64,000 bases of DNA from Pecten maximus. Lineage: Eukaryota. The stretch's first letter is position 1. Every line of letters begins with the position of its first letter. Shown piece after piece: positions 35,401 through 56,493 of this stretch. The translations under genes were made by a program, and so were the position numbers. The notes below the pieces were generated by a model, which was given only the letters and a program-made list of their open reading frames with translations, was not told the DNA's origin and did no database searches. The stretch is taken from NCBI RefSeq assembly GCF_902652985.1, contig NC_047028.1, forward strand, positions 8,928,001-8,992,000, written 5' to 3'.

Positions 35401-36874
35401 TTGTGTATTCTATAATCATGTAGGTGTACAGTTAAACATGAGAGACTGAAGCTGATAGAGTGTGTAGCTATTAAAACAATGTACACATGTGCACATTAAA
35501 GTTGTGTGTATGTTTTCATGCTTGTTTTATGAGAGAAATGTTGTAAATAGGATTTTTATGAAGTAGGTTCATTCAAAAGTATTGTATAATATGTGTAATG
35601 AAACTAGTTGTTTTATTAAAAGCATGCTTAATCACATCTTGCAATGTTGACTAGACAGATAATAGTACCTATACCAATAGCTCCTCGTTTTCTTACCTAC
35701 TGTTTTTGTAACAAAAATACTAAACTAGATATGTTTGTTGAGAAACATTTTCGTCAATTTTCAGCTTTATTGAAGTTAATTTTAAAAGTGAACCTTGATC
35801 TCATGTACTCTTCACTGAAACAGAGAATCTGACAGAAAACCTGAGACCGATTTGCATTCTTGGTGATATTGAAGCTTGGATCTATTTTGGTCTCGTAATT
35901 TGTTCAAGCTGTACAAGTTTTAAACCAAAATGTTATACAGTATATACAAAGGTAGTAAATGTCTGTTCAGAAAAAATCTAGATACAACCTTTGCCATGTG
36001 GGTTGTGTCATATTGTTAATGGCAATATATCGGTTAACTCCGTAAAATATCGGAACCAAACCGAGTCTTAACGTAATTAGCCGAGATGTTAAAATTAGGC
36101 ATGCTCTACGCAATTTTGACCACCATTTACATAATGATGGATGATATTTGCAAATAGTATCTTTTTTATTCTTGTATGTTAGGGTTGTAAATGAAATTTT
36201 GAGAGAATGTTAAGAAATTGTCCGTATGTTTTCATCAATTTTACACATTTCGTTTATATTTATCATTGTATGTATTTGTATAAAATGCTTATATCTTTTT
36301 GTGGGTATGATCAAAGTTTGTTGAAATATAGCAAAGAGGGAAAAGAAATACGTGTGTGTGTGTGCGCGATTGTTGGTGTAATGAAGATGAACAGAGTGTG
36401 TGATTTGCGGACAGCAGCCATCGTAATAATTGTATATATACTCTCTGTCGGCATATGATGAAGAGAAATAGCCATGTTTTGTAGCGTAATGGTATATATG
36501 AAGCCTGTGTGGTATACCCTGTATGAGTGTGTGGTGCCAGTGCATGCCTGACGGGGCCAGAGTGCTGTGAATGTGAGTAGAGCGGCATACAATGTCACAA
36601 GTAAGTGTTGTGTACCGATACCAGTCCATTGTCGGGTGTCGGAAAACGTGGACATTACTACCTGTCTACATACAAAAGATTTCAAATTAAAATAATTAGA
36701 GGTCTTATATATATATTGTCTTTGTTCTTCAATGACAGGTAAACCGGTGACAGATGAAGTCTTTCGCTATTCTTGTGACGAACTGACACACCCGATATTA
36801 GTACATTTAGATACAAATGATAGTTATATTCATAGCACCATAATGAATTAAACCTCAGTATACAGCTGTCTTTC

Positions 36875-39800
36875 GAGACAAAACAGGACACCTTCAAATG
36901 TAGACAAAGCAGGACATCTTCGAATGTAGACAAAGCAGGACACCTTCAAATAGACAAAACAGGACACCTTCGAATAGGACAAAGCAGGACACCTTCGAAT
37001 GTATACAAAGAAGGACACCTGCTAATGTAGACAAAGCAGGACACCTTCAAATGTAGAGACAGACCAGGACACCTTCAAATGTAGACAAAACAGGACACCT
37101 TCAAATGTATACAAAGAAGGACACCTTCAAATGTAGACAGACCAGGACACCTTCAAATAGACAAAAAAAGGACACCTGCAAATGTAGACAAAACAGGACA
37201 CCTTCAAATAGACAAAATAGTCCACCTTCATATGTAGACAAAACCGGACACCTTCATATGTAGACAAACCAGGACACCGTCATATGTAGACAAAGCATGA
37301 CTTCTTAAAATGTAGACAAAAAAGGATACCTTCAAACTGACAAAACAGGACACCTCCATATGTAGACAAACCAGGACTCCTTCAAATAGACAAAACATGA
37401 CACCTTCAAATAGACAAAAAAAGACACCTTCATATGTAGACAAAGCAAGGCACCTTCAAATGTATACAAAATAGGACACTCAAATGTAGACGAACGAGGA
37501 CATCTTCAAATAGACAAAAGGACACATGCTAATGTAGACAAAACAAGACACCTTCATATGTAGACAACCAGGACACCTTCAAATAGACAAAAGGACACCT
37601 GCTAATGTAGACAAAACAAGACACCTTCATATGTAGACAACCAGGACACCTTCAAATGTAGACAAAACCGGACACCTTCATATGTAGACAAAACATCACA
37701 CCTTCATATGTATACAAAGCAGGACACCTTCAAACAGACAAAACAGGACACCTCCGTATGTAGACAAAGCAGGACACCTTCAAATGTAGACAAAACAGGA
37801 CACCTTCAAATGTAGACAAAACATCACACCTTCATATGTATGCAAACCAGGACACCTTCAAACAGACAAAACAGGACACCTCCGTATGTAGACAAAGCAG
37901 GACACCTTCAAATGTAGACAAAACAGGACACCTTCAAACTGACAAAACAGGACACCTCCATATGTAGACATGGCAGGGCACCTTCAAATGTAGACAAAAC
38001 AGGTCACCGTCATATGTAGACAAAACAGGATACCTCCAAAAAGACAAAATAGGAGACCTTCATATGTAGACAAAGAAGGACACCTGCGTATGTAGACAAA
38101 ACAGGACACCTGCAAATGTAGACAAAAAAAGGACACCTCCAAAAAGACAAAATAGTCCACCTTCATATGCAGACAAACCAGGACACCTTAAAATGTAGAC
38201 AAAACATGACACCTTTGTATGTAGACAAACTTGGACACCTGCAAATGTAGACAAAGCAAGTCACCTTCAAATGTAGACAAAACAGGACACCTTAAAATAG
38301 ACAAAAAGAGGACACCTTCAAATAGACAAAACAGGACACCTCCATATGTAGACAAAAAAGGACACCTTCATATGTAGACTTGGTTTTGGTTTGTTTTTGT
38401 TTAACGTCCTATTAACAGTCGGGGTCATTTAAGGACGTGCCAGGTTTTGGAGGTGGAGGAAAGCCGGAGTACCAGGAGAAAAACCACCGGCCTACGGTCA
38501 GTACCTGGCAACTGCCCCACGTAGGTTTCGAGCTCGCAACCCAGAGGTGGAGGGCTAGTGATAAAGTGTCGGGACACCTTAACCACTCGGCCACCGCGGC
38601 CCCTTCATCATCATATGTAGACAAACCAGGACACCTTCATATGTAGACAAAGCATGACTTCTTAAAATGTAGACAAAACAGGAAACCGTCATATGTAGAC
38701 AAAATAGGACACCTTCAAATGTATACAAAATAGGACACCTTCAAATAGACAAAACAGGACACCTTCAAATGTATACAAAGAAGGACACCTGCTAATGTAG
38801 ACAAAACAAGATACCTTCAAATGTAGACAAACCAGGACACCTTCATATTAAGACAAAACAGGACACCTTCAAATAGACAAAAAAGGACACCTTCAATTGT
38901 AGACAAAACAGGACACCTTCAAATGTAGACAAAGCAGGACATCTTCAAATAGACAAAACATGACACCTTCAAATAGACAAAACAGGACACCTGCTAATGC
39001 AGACAAAGCAAGACACCTTCAAATGTAGACAAAACAGGACACCGTCATATGTAAACAAAATAGGACACCTTCAAATGTATACAAAATAGGATACCTTTAA
39101 ATGTAGACAAAGGAGGACACCTTCAAATAGACAAAAAGGACACCTGCAAATGTAGACAAACAAGACACCTTCATATGTAGACAAATCAGGACACCTTCAA
39201 ATAGACAAAAAAATGACACCTGCAAATGTAGACAAAACAGGACACCCCCAAAAAGACAAAATAGGACACCTTCATTTGTAGAAAACCAGAAGACACCTTA
39301 AATTAGACAAACATGACACCTTCATATGTTAACAAAGAAGACACCTCAATAGACAAACAGGAACCTTCAAACTAAGACACAATAAACAGCACCATTCAAA
39401 TGAAAAAAGGACACCTTCATAAAGACAAAACAGGACCCTGCAAATATAGACAAAAGCAGGACACCCTTTAAAGACAAACAACCTTCAAAATAGACAAAAC
39501 AACAACACCTCATATGTAGACAACAACAACTTCAATTAAAGACACAAAGCCAAACCAGAGCAAAACAGGACACCCTTCTATAGACAAAGCAACACCTTCA
39601 AAGTAGACAAAACAGGACACCTTCAAATGTAGACAAAACATCACGCCTTCATATGTATACAAAGCAGGACACCTTCAAACAGACAAAACAGGACACCTCC
39701 GTATGTAGACAAAGCAGGACACCTTCAAATGTAGACAAAACAGGACACCTTCAAACTGACAAAACAGGACACCTCCATATGTAGACAAGGCAGGACACCT

Positions 39801-41755
39801 TCAAATGTAGACAAAACAGGTCACCGTCATATGTAGACAAAACAGGATACCTCCAAAAAGACAAAATAGGAGACCTTCATATGTAGACAAAGAAGGACAC
39901 CTGCGTATGTAGACAAAACAGGACACCTGCAAATGTAGACAAAAAAAGGATACCTCCAAAAAGACAAAATAGTCCACCTTCATATGCAGACAAACCAGGA
40001 CACCTTAAAATGTAGACAAAACATGACACCTTTGTATGTAGACAAACTTGGACACCTGCAAATGTAGACAAAGCAAGTCACCTTCAAATGTAGACAAAAC
40101 AGGACACCTTAAAATAGACAAAGCAGGACACCTTCAAATAGACAAAACAGGACTCCTTCATATGTATACAAAGAAGGACACGACCAGTAGAGTGTGGCTT
40201 ACAGTTGTGGTACGCCTTAACATCGGGCATTCAGGACTTCCATGTAGCAAGGACGTCAAAGTCGGAAACCAGGAAAAAACCACGCTAGGTCAACCTGCAA
40301 TGTGACCAAAGTACTTCAATGTGCAAACCTTGAAAATGTAGACAAACGAGGAAACCTTCAAATAGACAAAACTGGACACCTTCATATGTAGACAAAGCAG
40401 GGCACCTTCAAACAGACAAAACAGGACACCTTCAAATGTATACAAAGAAGGACACCTGCTAATGTAGACAAAACAAGATACCTTCAAATGTAGACAAACC
40501 AGGACACCTTCATATGTAGACAAACCAGGACACCTTCATATTTAGACAAAACAGGACACCTTTAAATGTAGACAAAACAGGACACCGTCATATGTAGACA
40601 AAGCAGGACATCTTCAAATAGACAAAACATGACACCTTCAAATAGACAAAACAGGACACCTGCTAATGCAGACAAAGCAAGACACCTTCAAATGTAGACA
40701 AAACAGGACACCGTCATATGTAAACAAAATAGGACACCTTCAAATGTATACAAAATAGGACACCGTCATATGTAAACAAAATAGGACACCTTCAAATGTA
40801 TACAAAATAGGATACCTTTAAATGTAGACAAAGGAGGACACCTTCAAATAGACAAAAAGGACACCTGCAAATGTAGACAAAACAAGACACCTTCATATGT
40901 AGACAAATCAGGACACCTTCAAATAGACAAAAAAAGGACACCTGCAAATGTAGACAAAAACAGGACACCCCCAAAAAGACAAAATAGGACACCTTCATTT
41001 GTAGACAAACCAGGACACCTTCAAATAGACAAAACATGACACCTTCATATGTTTACAAAGAAGGCACCTGCTAATGTAGACAAAGCAAGACACCTTCAAA
41101 TGTAGACAAAACAGGACACCTTCAAACTGACAAAACAGGACACCTTCATATGAAGACAAACTAGGACACCTGCAAATATAGACAAAGCAGGACACCTTCA
41201 AATAGACAAAACAGGACACCTGCAAATATAGACAAAACAAGACACCTTCAAAAAGACAAAACAAGACACCTTCAAATGTCGACAAAACAGGATAGCTGCA
41301 AATGTTGATAAAATATGACACCTTAATGTAGACAAAATATAACACCTTCAAATTTAGACAAAATATAACGCCTTCAAATTTAGACAAAATATAACGCCTT
41401 CAAATTTAGAAACAATAGTATACCTGCAAATGTAGACAAAATAGGACACCTTCAAATGTATACAAAGAAGGACACCTGCTTATGTAGACAAAGCAAGAAA
41501 CCTGCAAATGTAGACAAAACAAGACACCTTCATATGTAGACAACCAGGACACCTTCAAATAGACAAAAAAAAGACACCTGAAAATGTAGACAAAACAAGA
41601 CACATTCAAATGTAGACAAACCATAAAACCTCCAAAAAAGACAAAATAGGACAGCTTCCTATGTAGACAAAACAGGACACCTGCAAATGAAGACAAACCG
41701 GGACACCTTCAAATAGACAAAATAGGACACCTTCACATGAAGACAAACCAGGATA
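36875..41755. repeat. 24/26-bp satellite (gacaaaacaggacaccttcaaa[tg]ta), about 4.9 kb
   Basis: Direct tandem copies; contains a SINE insertion and a kb-scale internal duplication. Confidence 0.95.
38380..38610 (-). mobile_element. tRNA-derived SINE with V-domain-like core, intact copy
   Basis: Minus strand ggggccgcggtggccgagtggttaagg (A box), B-box-like tcgaaacc, ggtttttctcctggtactccggctttcctcc core, (AAACC) tail. TSD tcatatgtagac at 38368-38379 and 38611-38622. Confidence 0.88.
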
Positions 41756-53171: not shown

Positions 53172-56015
53172 TCACTCTCTTCTGATGTTCTTGAAATGTA
53201 CAGAATCTTTGGAATATTTTAGAACCGACTCGGCATATTTCTTCTCATTGATATACAAATAATTCTTGATTTCCGTCCGCCTGTCGTTGACATCGCTGAA
53301 TATATGTCCGCTATACCCAGGGCAGATCTCGAAATCTAGACTGACGTCATATCTGTGGTCGCTAATAGTGGCCTACAATAAAAAGCATAAAGTACGTATA
53401 TGCAACGATGACGACAAATTAATTATGTTGATAAGGGAGTTCGACTATTAACCATGTAAGCATTAATTAACATGTATAAACGAATCGTCACGTGATACGT
53501 CTTTAAATTAGGAGGTGCCTAAAATAACTGTGTCTGTGGATCAGTGACGCTGAAATTGTAGATTCTTTCGCGGATGCTCACATATGCTTTTCAACCTTAG
53601 AGATATCGATAGCGTATACACTTTAGCTCATCAAGTGCATAAATTGGTACCCACAGGTATAGAAATATATCTAATTAACACCAACAAATGATACCCACGG
53701 TATAGAGATATATCTAATTAACACCAACAAATGATACCAACGGTATAGAAATATATCTAATTAACACCAACAAATGATACCAACGGTATAGAAATATATC
53801 TAATTAACACCAACAAATGATACCAACATTATAGAAATATATCTAATTAACACCAACAAATGATACCAACGGTATAGAAATATATCTAATTAACACCAAC
53901 AAATGATACTTACGTTATAGAAATATAAACCTATACCATTATGACTATTTGTCAGAGATATAATGCCTTAGAATAAACGCAATTGGAAACTGGTGATGTA
54001 GACACCCGTGTATGAATTCTGTTGATGACGTTAACGTTTTAAGAACCAACATATCTAAGTAATGACAAGGGATATAGAATGAGGTTTGACATTTTTTTCG
54101 ACCTATTTGGTTTTCTCAGGCGCCTTCTAGGTATCAAAACCTAACATCACTGGCGAGTCCTAGAAGGATGGAACAGCTGTATGATGTCCCTAACATCACT
54201 GACGAGTCCTAGAAGGATGGAACAGCTGTATGATGTCCCTAACATCACTGACGAGTCCTAGAAGGATGGAACAGCTGTATGATGTCCCTAACATCACTGA
54301 CGAGTCCTAGAAGGATGGAACAGCTGTATGATGTCCCTATCATCACTGACGAGTCCTAGAAGGATGGAACAGCTGTATGACGTCCCTATCATCACTGACG
54401 AGTCCTAGAAGGATGGAACAGCTGTATGACGTCCCTATCATCACTGACAAGTCCTAGAAGGATGAAACAGCTGTATGATGTCCCTAGCATCACTAACGAG
54501 TCATAGAAGGACGAAACAGTTGTATGATGTCCCTAACATCATTGGCGAGTCCTAGAAGGACGAAACAGCTGTATGATGTCCCTAGCATCACTGACGAATC
54601 CTAAAAGGACGAAACAGCTGTATGATGTCCCTAACATCACTGACGAATTATCGAAGAACGATACAGCTGTGTAATGTCCCTAAAATCACTGACGAGTCCT
54701 AGAAGAACGATACAGCTGTATGATGTCCCTAACATCACTGACAAATCCTAGAAGAACGATACATCTGTATGATGTCCCTAACATCACTGACGAGTCCTAG
54801 AAGAACGATACAGCTGTATGATGTCCCTAACATCACTGACGAGTCATAGAAGAACGATACAGCTGTATGATGTCCCTAACATCACTGACGAGTCCTAGAA
54901 GAACGAAACAGCTGTATGATTGATGTTCCTAACATCACTGACGAATCCTATAAGAACGATACAGCTGTATGATGTCCCTAACATTACTGACGAGCCCTAA
55001 AAGAACGATACAGCTATGTGATGTCCCTAACATCACTGACGAATCCTAGAAGAACGATACAGCTGTATGATGTCCCTAGCATCACTAACGAGTCCTAGAT
55101 GTACGATACAGCTGTATGATGTCCCTAACATCACTGACAAGTCCAAGCAGGACAATACAGCTGTGTGATGTCCCTAGCATCACTGACGAAATCTCGAAGA
55201 ACGATACAGATGTATGATGTCCCTAACATCACTGACGAGTCCTAGAAGGACGATACAGCTGTATGATGTCCCTAACATCACCGACGAATCCTAGAAGAAC
55301 GATACAGCTGTATGATGCAGTTTTAATCCTTTTGACTCTACTGTATCTTACTCTCAGTTTGTTTCAGAGGGTACTTATATCCTGTTTTTGCTATCCTTAA
55401 TAATTAACTATCTGAACGTACATAGCTTCAAATGTCATACTTACTGTCGTCTCAACAGGCTGGCCAGTTATCCATACATGGAAGTTGTCACGTGCTGAAA
55501 GAAATCAGTAGATGATGACAGGGGCTATTATCAGTAAAACAACTATATCAAGAACTTGTCACATAACACATATATAAGTAGCTAACTAATTAACAACGAA
55601 TTGTGATATATTGTAAATAAGTAAATAAATTAGATTTGTGCATTTTTTGGATTGCACATTCATCATTAACAAAATCCAAACAATTTTGTTAGTTTCCACA
55701 TCAGGAAGGACAATAAAAACATGTACGGTTATGTATCTCTAAACATTGCTTCTGTATAATTGTTTGATAAATACAGTTTAATAAAAACAGATCGAAAAGG
55801 GATGGTTCTGTCCAGTATAACAAGGGAAAACGTTCCATTATCTTGGTGACAGACTGAAGATAACAAGAAATACGATATAGGTGAGGAATGTCTCGTGACA
55901 AATTAGCTAGATATGTGTTTGTATATCTGTACTTACAGAATGATATCCGTACATGCTGACCACCTAAATCTATTTCCCAGGCACAGCTCAGGCTTGCTCC
56001 TTTGCCCTTCTCCAT
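53172..56015 (-). CDS. FAIM-like (Fas apoptotic inhibitory molecule domain) protein, about 109 aa: complement join(55937-56015,55445-55494,53172-53372)
   Basis: Canonical TTTCAG/TGTAG acceptors and GTAAGT donors with matching phases. Spliced product MEKGKGASLSCAWEIDLGGQHVRISFSRDNFHVWITGQPVETTATISDHRYDVSLDFEICPGYSGHIF...YLYINEKKY resembles the recalled FAIM C-domain (WVLHMDGENFRIVLEKDAMDVWCNGKKLET). Start codon uncertain. Confidence 0.7.
53648..53927. repeat. 43-bp minisatellite, about 6.5 copies
   Basis: Unit ggtatagaaatatatctaattaacaccaacaaatgataccaac. Confidence 0.92.
54140..55317 (+). ncRNA. Tandem array of 24 minimal hammerhead-ribozyme motifs (49-bp unit)
   Basis: Reconstructed unit ccta-ACATCA-CTGACGA-GTCC-tagaa-GGAC-GAAA-C-agct-G-TA-TGATGT-c. 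It has stem I ACATCA/TGATGT, core CUGACGA, stem II GTCC/GGAC, GAAA, palindromic stem III and a GUA cleavage triplet. Individual units carry substitutions. Confidence 0.85.
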
Positions 56016-56102: not shown

Positions 56103-56493
56103 TGGTGTATACACTCAACGAACTCTGTCATTTTACAATATGAAATAACCTTGGTGTATACACTCCCCAAACTCGTCATTGTACAATATGATATGACCTT
56201 GGTGAATACACTCCACAAACTCGTCATTGTACAATATGAAATGACCTTGGTGTATACACTCCCCAAACTCGTCATTGTACCATATGAAATGACCTTGGTG
56301 TATACACTCCACAAACTCGTCATTGTACAATATGAAATGACCTTGGTGAATACACTCCACGAACTCGTCATTGTACAATATGAAATGACCTTGGTGAATA
56401 CACTCCACGAACTCAACAATGTACAATATGAAATTACCTTGGTGTATACACTCCACAAACTCGTCATTGTACAATATGAAATGACCTTGGTGC
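56103..56493. repeat. 48-bp minisatellite, about 8 copies
   Basis: Unit tacaatatgaaatgaccttggtgtatacactccacaaactcgtcattg. Confidence 0.93.

What the first reader, a model, noticed from the sequence alone, without database searches (positions are those of the whole stretch)
54140..55317. A minisatellite made of hammerhead ribozymes: 24 head-to-tail 49-nt units
Seen: each unit reconstructs to ACAUCA-CUGACGA-GUCC(UAGAA)GGAC-GAAA-CAGCUG-UA^UGAUGU with a 5-nt linker (CCCUA) and nothing else. Established: this is the hammerhead core (CUGAnGA, GAAA, NUH). Minimal type I hammerheads with a palindromic stem III are known from Penelope-like elements and non-LTR retrozymes, whose monomers are usually much longer. 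Inference: in a multimeric RNA the linker closes stem I as a hairpin (UGAUGU-CCCUA-ACAUCA), and the palindrome ACAGCUGU of adjacent units forms an 8-bp stem III. The array therefore also reads as overlapping type III hammerheads, and loop 1 CUA is complementary to loop 2 UAG. Cleavage would release 49-nt monomers that could circularise. The array is either a rolling-circle cDNA of an extremely small ribozyme-only circular RNA (a minimal retrozyme) or an in situ amplification of one hammerhead. The flanks aaaac / gtttt extend stem I, which favours a single ancestral ribozyme; no TSD is visible.
Basis: partly seen in the sequence, partly recalled or inferred. Interest (0 to 1): 0.92.

Follow-up and report, generated by a model that had tools for sequence, protein, structure and literature searches.

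The report
Decayed hammerhead-ribozyme minisatellite from a retrozyme
The 24 head-to-tail copies of a 49-base self-cutting RNA motif (hammerhead ribozyme) are real, but 22 of them carry a disabling mutation, and the array is one of hundreds in this genome that grew out of the ribozyme segment of a longer mobile element of an already described kind (a retrozyme).

Summary
The array is real: 49 bp x 24.0 copies at 54140-55317. It is exactly the consensus of a genome-wide family, with at least 2,675 exact inter-unit junctions and 371 perfect catalytic bodies. Here 22 of 24 units carry a substitution at an invariant core nucleotide, and no unit reaches an Rfam gathering score. Intact relatives elsewhere pass the Hammerhead_1 threshold, and their predicted fold is the dimer-type three-way junction.

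The flanks are not anonymous. About 50-70 nt upstream and 80 nt downstream match the two ends of a roughly 395-nt element. That element carries one hammerhead, occurs head-to-tail in some copies, and has a fixed 3' end. This is the architecture of a non-LTR retrozyme.

The 49-bp arrays are secondary expansions of the ribozyme segment alone. They share one internal junction. They also grow locally at the DNA level whether or not the ribozyme is alive: private dead variants are amplified, neighbouring units are the most alike, and dead variants of 39 and 50 bp period have expanded too.

RNA-labelled libraries hold family contigs, but they come from other copies, and DNA carry-over is not excluded.

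Verdict: a new, very small member of a known kind. This copy is a dead relic. The scan has flagged the same satellite repeatedly in this genome.

The parts
54071..54139 (+). Remnant of the 5' arm of the parent retrozyme-like element. It is 5'-truncated and has a small deletion just before the first ribozyme.
   Evidence: nhmmer with a profile of 12 long family copies: envelope starts at 54071 and the alignment at 54091. The shared upstream motif is seen in alignments of other loci. BLAST finds two other copies of 54085-54137.
54140..54433 (+). Units 1-6 of the 49-bp array. All carry A13>G (GGAA) and 11.1 C>U. Units 2-4 are identical.
   Evidence: Unit table and per-unit differences from the family consensus.
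54434..54629 (+). Units 7-10. GAAA is kept, but units 7, 8 and 9 are mutated at G8, G5 and C3+A6. Unit 10 (54581-54629) has an intact core with an A10.1/C11.1 mismatch.
   Evidence: This block holds the best Rfam Hammerhead_3 hit, 54566-54620, 38.8 bits.
54630..55317 (+). Units 11-24. Thirteen carry A14>U (GAUA) and most carry 11.3 G>A. Unit 16 (54875-54927) keeps the core but has a 4-nt insertion in stem I and a stem II mismatch.
   Evidence: A14>U is found in 13 of 24 units here against 3 of 341 units in other arrays, so it is a private variant amplified in place.
55318..55398 (+). 3' arm of the parent element, ending at the family's common 3' boundary.
   Evidence: nhmmer hit 55265-55386 (envelope to 55398), 87 bits, E 9.6e-27. 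At least 28 other genomic copies of 55312-55386 exist. 34 of 65 copies end at the same profile position, about 90 nt after the ribozyme.

Best explanation
This is a dead, TE-derived minisatellite. The parent is a roughly 395-nt non-coding element built like a non-LTR retrozyme: one canonical type I hammerhead followed by about 345 nt, found head-to-tail, with copies that share a fixed 3' end.

In one lineage of that element, a 49-bp segment holding only the ribozyme plus a 5-6 nt linker became tandemly duplicated. That event created the junction ...UGAUG|UCCCUAA.... Array-bearing copies then spread, still framed by the element's arms (inferred).

At each locus the array has since grown and shrunk by ordinary DNA-level processes (replication slippage, unequal exchange), regardless of ribozyme activity (shown by the pattern of variants). 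The window holds one such 5'-truncated copy. Its 24 units fall into three locally amplified blocks, and 22 of them carry a substitution at an invariant core nucleotide. A transcript of this locus would therefore be cut at two sites at most. No function at this locus is indicated.

Intact relatives elsewhere could still fold as dimer-type hammerheads and self-cleave.
For: Array and unit states.

Family consensus is a perfect hammerhead. Intact relatives pass the Rfam Hammerhead_1 threshold, 35.8 bits against 34. A natural tetramer, L004:1550-1745, folds into the full three-way junction with z -4.7.

Arms and parent element:
- The downstream flank has at least 28 other copies, lying next to arrays, next to a single ribozyme, or next to none detected.
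- A single-ribozyme copy used as query gives 456 first-look candidates at 71-78% identity.
- Alignments show the shared arms, and a second ribozyme 392-397 nt downstream in L072 and L073; degenerate second copies follow in L057 and L074.
- The window's flanks match the profile.
- The 3' end is common to 34 of 65 copies.

One origin of the repeat junction: the internal linker ends CCCTAA in 264 of 457 units across loci, while the arm-adjacent first unit usually carries the arm type.

DNA-level growth without activity:
- A14>U is private: 13/24 here against 3/341 elsewhere.
- Unit difference rises from 4.7 at lag 1 to 7.5-7.9 at lag 16-20.
- A 50-bp dead variant x26 lies in L032, and a 39-bp-period variant at C1:53903335-53903514.

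No selection signal: stems show no covariation beyond shuffles. In dispersed copies the core is no better kept than the 3' arm, 0.76-0.85 against 0.81.

The genome forms minisatellites readily: 51 TRF rows in 64 kb, and the neighbouring 48-bp array is unique to this locus.

Literature: canonical type I architecture and dimer mode (PMC4209133); mussel retrozymes of 350-390 bp (PMC7229834); retrozyme consensus lengths of 51-972 bp and local amplification by unequal crossover (bioRxiv 10.64898/2026.07.22.740005).
Against: - No target-site duplication was found at the inferred ends; the copy is old and diverged.
- Long tandem arrays of the 395-nt monomer were not seen among the top hits; only partial dimers and solitary copies appeared.
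- The link to an autonomous Penelope-like element was not shown. No reverse-transcriptase ORF lies next to any fetched copy.
- A tree of the 3' arms does not group array-bearing copies (14 changes against 15.6 in shuffles). It is almost unresolved, so spread of an array-bearing lineage rests on the shared junction alone.
- Loss of activity from the core substitutions rests on published mutagenesis of other hammerheads recalled from memory, not on an assay of these units.
Confidence: 0.7

Rival explanations
1. Mini-retrozyme. The arrays are rolling-circle cDNAs of a 49-nt ribozyme-only circular RNA that is cut out by the hammerheads, ligated, reverse transcribed and integrated.
For: The unit equals one ribozyme plus a 5-nt linker. 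Hundreds of dispersed arrays exist. Runs of perfect units occur elsewhere, for example C6:21852746-21855329. Family contigs reach high word depth in RNA-labelled runs. The multimer folds into active-type junctions.
Against: Arrays sit in a fixed phase between conserved arms of a longer element, and the first unit is of the arm type. Dead variants and off-size variants of 39 and 50 bp amplify just as well. Similarity between units falls with distance, which is not what a cDNA copied from one circle would give. The RNA evidence is contigs only, from other copies, and DNA carry-over is not excluded.
Confidence: 0.08
2. Each array was born independently in place from the single ribozyme of a resident copy. 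There was no array-bearing lineage. Recurrent duplication was perhaps favoured by the inverted stem I arms at the unit ends.
For: Array-bearing and single-ribozyme copies are intermixed on the tree of 3' arms. Local amplification clearly happens. The genome forms unique minisatellites readily.
Against: Nearly all arrays share the same 49-bp period and the same internal junction. That junction differs from the arm-type sequence kept by the first unit. Independent events should give varied breakpoints and periods. The tree has almost no resolved branches.
Confidence: 0.15
3. The carrier is a DNA transposon of the MITE or Helitron type with a central minisatellite, as described in other bivalves. 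The hammerhead is an incidental passenger.
For: Bivalve satellites are often embedded in such elements (from memory; PMC5139131 discusses links between satellites and transposable elements). The upstream 43-bp array is another dispersed minisatellite family.
Against: The arms are the two ends of a head-to-tail 395-nt unit carrying a ribozyme at each junction. The fixed 3' end fits retrotransposition. No terminal inverted repeats were noticed in the alignments, though no formal search for them was run.
Confidence: 0.04
4. The array is a host-recruited functional element, for example an RNA-processing cassette or a source of small RNAs for a neighbouring gene.
For: Family sequence is present in RNA-labelled libraries.
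Against: 22 of 24 cores are mutated. There is no covariation and no excess conservation. The unique flanks of this locus have zero depth in the two runs recorded as RNA. No ORF of note lies nearby.
Confidence: 0.03

Closest known systems
Non-LTR retrozymes of invertebrates, e.g. the Mytilus galloprovincialis 350-390 bp repeats (PMC7229834)
   Same: A canonical type I hammerhead with a minimal palindromic helix III. The roughly 395-nt parent monomer is found head-to-tail, is AT-rich, has about 450-480 first-look candidate copies per genome search (the searches give lower bounds), and appears in RNA libraries.
   Different: Here a second level of repetition exists: only the 49-bp ribozyme segment is multiplied inside the element. 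Long arrays of the full monomer were not seen. Circular RNA was not shown.
Shortest vertebrate non-LTR retrozyme families, consensus 51 bp (bioRxiv 10.64898/2026.07.22.740005)
   Same: A tandem repeat whose unit is barely longer than the ribozyme. The proposed origin is also the same: the end of a Penelope-like element, followed by local amplification through unequal crossover.
   Different: 49 bp is below the reported range. This one is in a mollusc. Its nesting inside a longer retrozyme-like monomer is documented here. Sequences of the 51-bp family were not available for comparison.
Minimal hammerheads in the terminal repeats of Penelope-like elements (PMC4209133)
   Same: Dimer-dependent ribozymes linked to retroelements, with a palindromic 15.2-16.2 region and a G10.1-C11.1 pair in the consensus.
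   Different: Those have a long helix II (6-8 bp), a short helix I (4-5 bp) and an extra unpaired base. This one has the canonical 6/4 architecture. No Penelope ORF was found beside any fetched copy.
Newt satellite 2 / axolotl retrozymes and Schistosoma Sm-alpha repeats (from memory, and PMC7229834)
   Same: Satellite DNAs that encode type I hammerheads acting as dimers.
   Different: Their units are about 330 nt with much non-ribozyme sequence. Here the repeated unit is the ribozyme alone.

Membership tests
Hammerhead ribozyme (Rfam clan CL00010) | Invariant core CUGANGA ... GAAA ... UH cleavage triplet | tested here: inconclusive
   Met by the family consensus, by 192 of 387 sampled units elsewhere and by 371 exact perfect bodies genome-wide. 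In the window's array only 2 of 24 units meet it.
Hammerhead ribozyme (Rfam clan CL00010) | Three helices around the core | tested here: met
   Helix I is 6 bp and helix II 4 bp. Helix III is 2 bp within a unit or 8 bp between adjacent units. The minimum-energy fold of the natural tetramer L004:1550-1745 shows the full junction, z -4.7. A window segment folds less cleanly.
Hammerhead ribozyme (Rfam clan CL00010) | Score at or above the Rfam gathering threshold | tested here: not met
   Window: no hit at gathering. The best scores are 31.6 against 34 (type I) and 38.8 against 48.5 (type III). Intact relatives in L004 reach 35.8 against 34 for Hammerhead_1.
Hammerhead ribozyme (Rfam clan CL00010) | Mg-dependent self-cleavage after H17 | not testable with these tools
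   It needs in vitro transcription. Published core mutagenesis, recalled from memory, predicts that 22 of 24 units here are inactive.
Non-LTR retrozyme | Type I hammerheads in head-to-tail repeats, with at least two consecutive complete motifs | tested here: inconclusive
   Met by relatives, which have runs of 3-4 fully intact units in L004, L005 (one locus, also fetched as L006, L012, L019, L022), L020, L026 and L028 and runs of six at C6:21.85 Mb. Not met in the window: its two core-intact units, 10 and 16, are not adjacent.
Non-LTR retrozyme | Monomer carrying non-ribozyme sequence (about 170-400 nt; 51-972 bp in the 2026 survey) | tested here: met
   The parent monomer is about 392-397 nt between successive ribozymes. 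The 49-bp unit itself lies just below the published range.
Non-LTR retrozyme | Accumulates as linear and circular RNA of monomer size | tested here: inconclusive
   Only contigs were available. Family contigs are present in RNA-labelled runs, some of 383-609 nt with arms. They come from other copies, show no ends or strand, and DNA carry-over is not excluded.
Non-LTR retrozyme | Retrotransposon-like insertions (fixed 3' end, target-site duplication) | tested here: inconclusive
   34 of 65 copies share a 3' boundary. No target-site duplication was recognised at the window's inferred ends.
Non-LTR retrozyme | Relationship to the terminal repeat of an autonomous Penelope-like element | not tested
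   No reverse-transcriptase ORF or Pfam hit lies beside the fetched copies.
Penelope-type minimal hammerhead (min-HHR) | Helix II 6-8 bp, helix I 4-5 bp, unpaired base 5' of helix II, no loop 3 | tested here: not met
   The unit has helix I 6 bp, helix II 4 bp and a 4-nt palindromic loop 3. It is the canonical metazoan type I form as defined in PMC4209133.

The most novel reading that the evidence does not exclude
The still-intact arrays of this family elsewhere in the genome (for example the runs of perfect units at C6:21852746-21855329) are transcribed, cut themselves into 49-nt RNAs and are ligated into circles. These would be the smallest natural self-cleaving circular RNAs known. Such circles, or structure-guided template jumping at the ribozyme during reverse transcription, would add units to arrays. 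The minisatellite would then grow partly through RNA.
Probability: 0.1. Interest if true: 0.8.

Novelty: new member of a known kind. Interest (0 to 1): 0.4.

Why it matters
Tandem hammerhead repeats (non-LTR retrozymes) are an established class. A 2026 survey already lists units down to 51 bp and proposes local amplification from the ends of Penelope-like elements.

This case adds three things:
- a bivalve example at the lower size limit, where the repeated unit is the ribozyme and nothing else;
- a clear view of its origin as a nested expansion inside a normal-sized, roughly 395-nt retrozyme-like monomer;
- direct sequence evidence that such arrays keep growing at the DNA level after the ribozyme has died.

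The last point is a caution for motif-based counts of 'active retrozymes'. If the intact arrays elsewhere make 49-nt circles, the family would become a very compact natural system for studying cleavage and ligation by dimeric hammerheads. The window's own copy is a relic.

Tried and rejected
- Rfam at gathering thresholds on the whole window gave nothing. The same search on five long family copies also gave nothing, so the roughly 345-nt non-ribozyme part matches no known RNA family.
- Three flank copies at C8:27.94 Mb, spaced about 3.7-4.9 kb apart, looked like a tandem Penelope-like element. The region proved to hold a non-coding tandem duplication of about 3.7 kb with no Pfam hits.
- The longest open frames in all fetched loci were scanned for reverse transcriptase. 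Only an unrelated ligand-gated channel exon turned up, in L066.
- The tree of 3' arms, meant to test for an array-bearing subfamily, came out star-like and uninformative.
- The covariation test on stems I-III showed no excess over shuffles.
- The fold of one natural 397-nt monomer (L072:1519-1915) gave z -1.95, too weak to argue for a retrozyme-like rod.
- An exact-pattern scan of JGI metagenome contigs for the ribozyme body found nothing.
- A first fuzzy-regex script timed out.
- Sequencing runs were available only as contigs. RNA ends, strand and circular joints could not be read.
- No further genome sequence could be fetched. The apparently young arrays on C6 were therefore seen only as coordinates.
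- A literature search for hammerhead plus scallop or Pecten returned no listed paper containing the word hammerhead.
Full report
**1. The observation**

Tandem Repeats Finder reports one array at 54140-55317: period 49, 24.0 copies, 90% matches, no indels, score 1704. Cutting it in register gives 24 units. The only length change is a 4-nt insertion in unit 16.

Rfam at curated thresholds finds nothing in the 64-kb window. With E-value reporting, only the + strand of the array gives hammerhead hits:
- Hammerhead_3 up to 38.8 bits (gathering 48.5), with alignments that run from the palindrome of one unit to the palindrome of the next;
- Hammerhead_1 up to 31.6 bits (gathering 34). E-values range from 1.7e-6 to 0.015.

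A descriptor for the two core boxes plus the palindrome matches twice in the window. It matches 0.00 times in 100 shuffles. The array and its hammerhead ancestry are therefore real.

- Units 1-6 read GGAA (A13>G).
- Units 7, 8 and 9 are hit at G8, G5 and C3+A6.
- Thirteen of units 11-24 read GAUA or AAUA (A14>U).
- Only units 10 and 16 keep every invariant base. Unit 10 has an A10.1/C11.1 mismatch. Unit 16 has a stem II mismatch and a 4-nt insertion in stem I.

Classical hammerhead mutagenesis (established knowledge, recalled from memory and not tested here) found that substitutions at these core positions lower cleavage by orders of magnitude. A transcript of this locus should not give a 49-nt ladder.

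**2. A genome-wide family**

The window is C14:8928001-8992000 of a 918,306,378-bp assembly in 3,983 contigs. From memory, those figures fit the king scallop assembly; I did not verify this.

A 245-nt piece of the array finds 1,962 first-look candidates on nearly all large contigs. I cut 387 units from 18 non-redundant loci. Of these units, 192 keep the core and 61 are intact in core and stems.

Exact counts over the whole genome:
- 2,675 copies of the 24-nt inter-unit junction (reversed-pattern control 0);
- 371 copies of the perfect 35-nt catalytic body, including runs of six consecutive perfect units at C6:21852746-21855329.

Intact relatives pass the curated Hammerhead_1 threshold, 35.8 against 34.

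A natural tetramer of intact units, L004:1550-1745, has a minimum-energy fold of -58.3 kcal/mol, z -4.7.
- an 8-bp helix III between the palindromes of adjacent units;
- a stem I hairpin closed by CCCUA;
- stem II.

This is the dimer mode described for canonical metazoan type I hammerheads, with helix I 6 bp, helix II 4 bp and helix III 1-2 bp plus a palindromic loop (PMC4209133).

The scan's notebook lists at least seven other first-stage notes on the same 49-bp ribozyme satellite elsewhere in this genome.

**3. The flanks are the arms of a longer element**

Flank alignments of independent arrays showed diverged but recognisable shared sequence on both sides.

The window's downstream flank, 55312-55386, has at least 28 other copies. 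Some abut 49-bp arrays. Some abut a single ribozyme. At some, no ribozyme was detected.

A single-ribozyme copy used as query gave 456 first-look candidates at 71-78% identity. Alignments of 30 copies, and then of the 12 longest, show the following order:
- the ribozyme;
- a 3' arm of about 90 nt;
- a middle part of about 190 nt;
- a 5' arm of about 70 nt;
- a second ribozyme. It lies 392-397 nt after the first in L072 and L073, and degenerate second copies are visible in L057 and L074.

The middle part is itself dispersed, with 477 candidates.

Of 65 copies that run from the ribozyme into the 3' arm, 34 stop at the same profile position, about 90 nt after the ribozyme. BLAST start points also vary from copy to copy, but in arrays the local alignment starts at the last unit, so they say little about 5' truncation. 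A fixed 3' end fits retrotransposed copies.

A head-to-tail monomer of about 395 nt, AT-rich, with one canonical type I hammerhead, is the architecture of non-LTR retrozymes; those of the mussel are 350-390 bp (PMC7229834).

A profile of the long copies places the window's element at about 54071-54139 (5' arm), then the array, then 55318-55398 (3' arm). It is not a family feature.

**4. How the 49-bp arrays arose and grow**

Across arrays on different chromosomes, the linker before stem I of internal units ends CCCTAA in 264 of 457 cases. The first unit, next to the 5' arm, usually keeps the arm-type sequence. The period is 49 almost everywhere. A shared breakpoint and a shared architecture argue for one founding duplication that then spread together with its arms.

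A tree of the 3' arms neither supports nor contradicts this. It is star-like, and the array label needs 14 changes against 15.6 in shuffles.

Later growth is local and independent of catalysis:
- A14>U is in 13 of 24 units here but in 3 of 341 units elsewhere.
- Mean difference between units rises from 4.7 at lag 1 to 7.5-7.9 at lag 16-20.
- A 50-bp variant with a ruined core and palindrome has reached 26 copies in L032.
- A 39-bp-period derivative that keeps the junction sits at C1:53903335-53903514.

There is no sign of selection on the RNA. Stem positions show no more pairing than shuffled partners, and disruptive changes far outnumber compensated ones. In dispersed single copies, the core is no better conserved than the adjoining arm, 0.76-0.85 against 0.81.

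The genome forms minisatellites readily. There are 51 TRF rows in this window. The 43-bp array 212 bp upstream is another dispersed family. The 48-bp array downstream is unique to this locus.

**5. RNA evidence**

Only assembled contigs of public runs were available. They were laid at 90% likeness on 53940-55540.

Two runs recorded as RNA and two guessed as RNA put many short contigs on the array at high word depth. In the two recorded-RNA runs, the unique flanks 53940-54101 and 55398-55540 have no depth. In the two guessed runs, a little depth appears downstream.

The contigs carry the family's letters where this locus is mutated: 55254 T>A, 54858 T>A, 54218-54220. Some continue into arm sequences of other copies, and some are 383-609 nt long. 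They therefore derive from other family members.

Contigs show no ends, strand or circular joints. A multi-thousand-copy repeat would also be the first thing to appear from slight DNA carry-over. Transcription of the family is suggested, not shown. Transcription of this locus is not indicated.

**6. Comparison with what is known, and verdict**

The motif is a member of the hammerhead family by descent. This copy fails the curated score, and 22 of its 24 cores are mutated.

The parent element meets the structural definition of a non-LTR retrozyme. Circular RNA, target-site duplications and a Penelope-like partner were not shown.

A 2026 preprint (bioRxiv 10.64898/2026.07.22.740005) reports retrozyme consensus lengths of 51-972 bp. 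It proposes birth from the ends of Penelope-like elements, followed by unequal crossover. A ribozyme-only repeat unit is therefore at the edge of known variation, not outside it.

I class the finding as a new member of a known kind. It is notable for its minimal unit, for its visible nesting inside a normal-sized monomer, and for showing that arrays go on growing after the ribozyme is dead.

The mini-retrozyme idea, 49-nt circles copied by rolling-circle reverse transcription, is not excluded for intact arrays elsewhere. For this family it is disfavoured by the conserved, in-phase arms and by the amplification of dead variants. I give it about 0.1.

Noticed in passing
window 36785-36871 (- strand), abutting 36876-41753: A second fragment of the same element family: the 3' part of a hammerhead (GAAA, palindrome, GUA) plus the 3' arm. 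It lies directly against a 4.9-kb minisatellite with a 26-bp unit. The ribozyme region of another copy is thus also the edge of a tandem array, here of a different unit.
   Followed up: partly
window 53648-53927: The 43-bp x6.5 minisatellite 212 bp upstream of the hammerhead array belongs to another dispersed family. That family has multi-kb arrays on at least 8 large contigs (C16:37.19 Mb, C11:17.38 Mb, C8:39.79 Mb, C7:42.49 Mb, C10:11.36 and 36.55 Mb, and others).
   Followed up: partly
window 56103-56492: The 48-bp x8.1 minisatellite downstream has no other copy in the genome, so it was born locally. The 64-kb window as a whole gives 51 TRF rows and is unusually dense in 20-60 bp minisatellites.
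   Followed up: partly
G000 C6:21852746-21855329 and C6:21866195-21866425: Arrays with many consecutive units whose 35-nt catalytic body is a perfect match, in runs of up to six at 49-nt spacing. These look like the youngest and possibly active members. They were seen only as coordinates, because no more sequence could be fetched.
   Followed up: no
G000 C1:53903335-53903514; L032:1742-3052: Off-size derivatives of the satellite. One has a 39-bp period and keeps the inter-unit junction. The other is a 50-bp unit x26 with GAAA and the palindrome destroyed. Both have expanded although they cannot be ribozymes.
   Followed up: partly
L054 (G000 C8:27940001-27950000): A non-coding tandem duplication of about 3.7 kb, with blocks 89-99% identical. 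It carries a single-hammerhead copy of the element in each repeat, next to 21-bp and 43-bp minisatellites.
   Followed up: yes
L038, L039/L040 and L027, upstream of the element: Other short interspersed repeats lie directly next to several copies. One has reversed tRNA-like A and B boxes. Another ends in a (CAAA)n-like tail. These are probably nested SINE insertions.
   Followed up: no
L066:1-474 (- strand): An open frame matching the ligand-binding domain of neurotransmitter-gated ion channels (Pfam PF02931, E 2.8e-22) lies about 1 kb from a copy of the element. This places that copy in or near a receptor gene.
   Followed up: no
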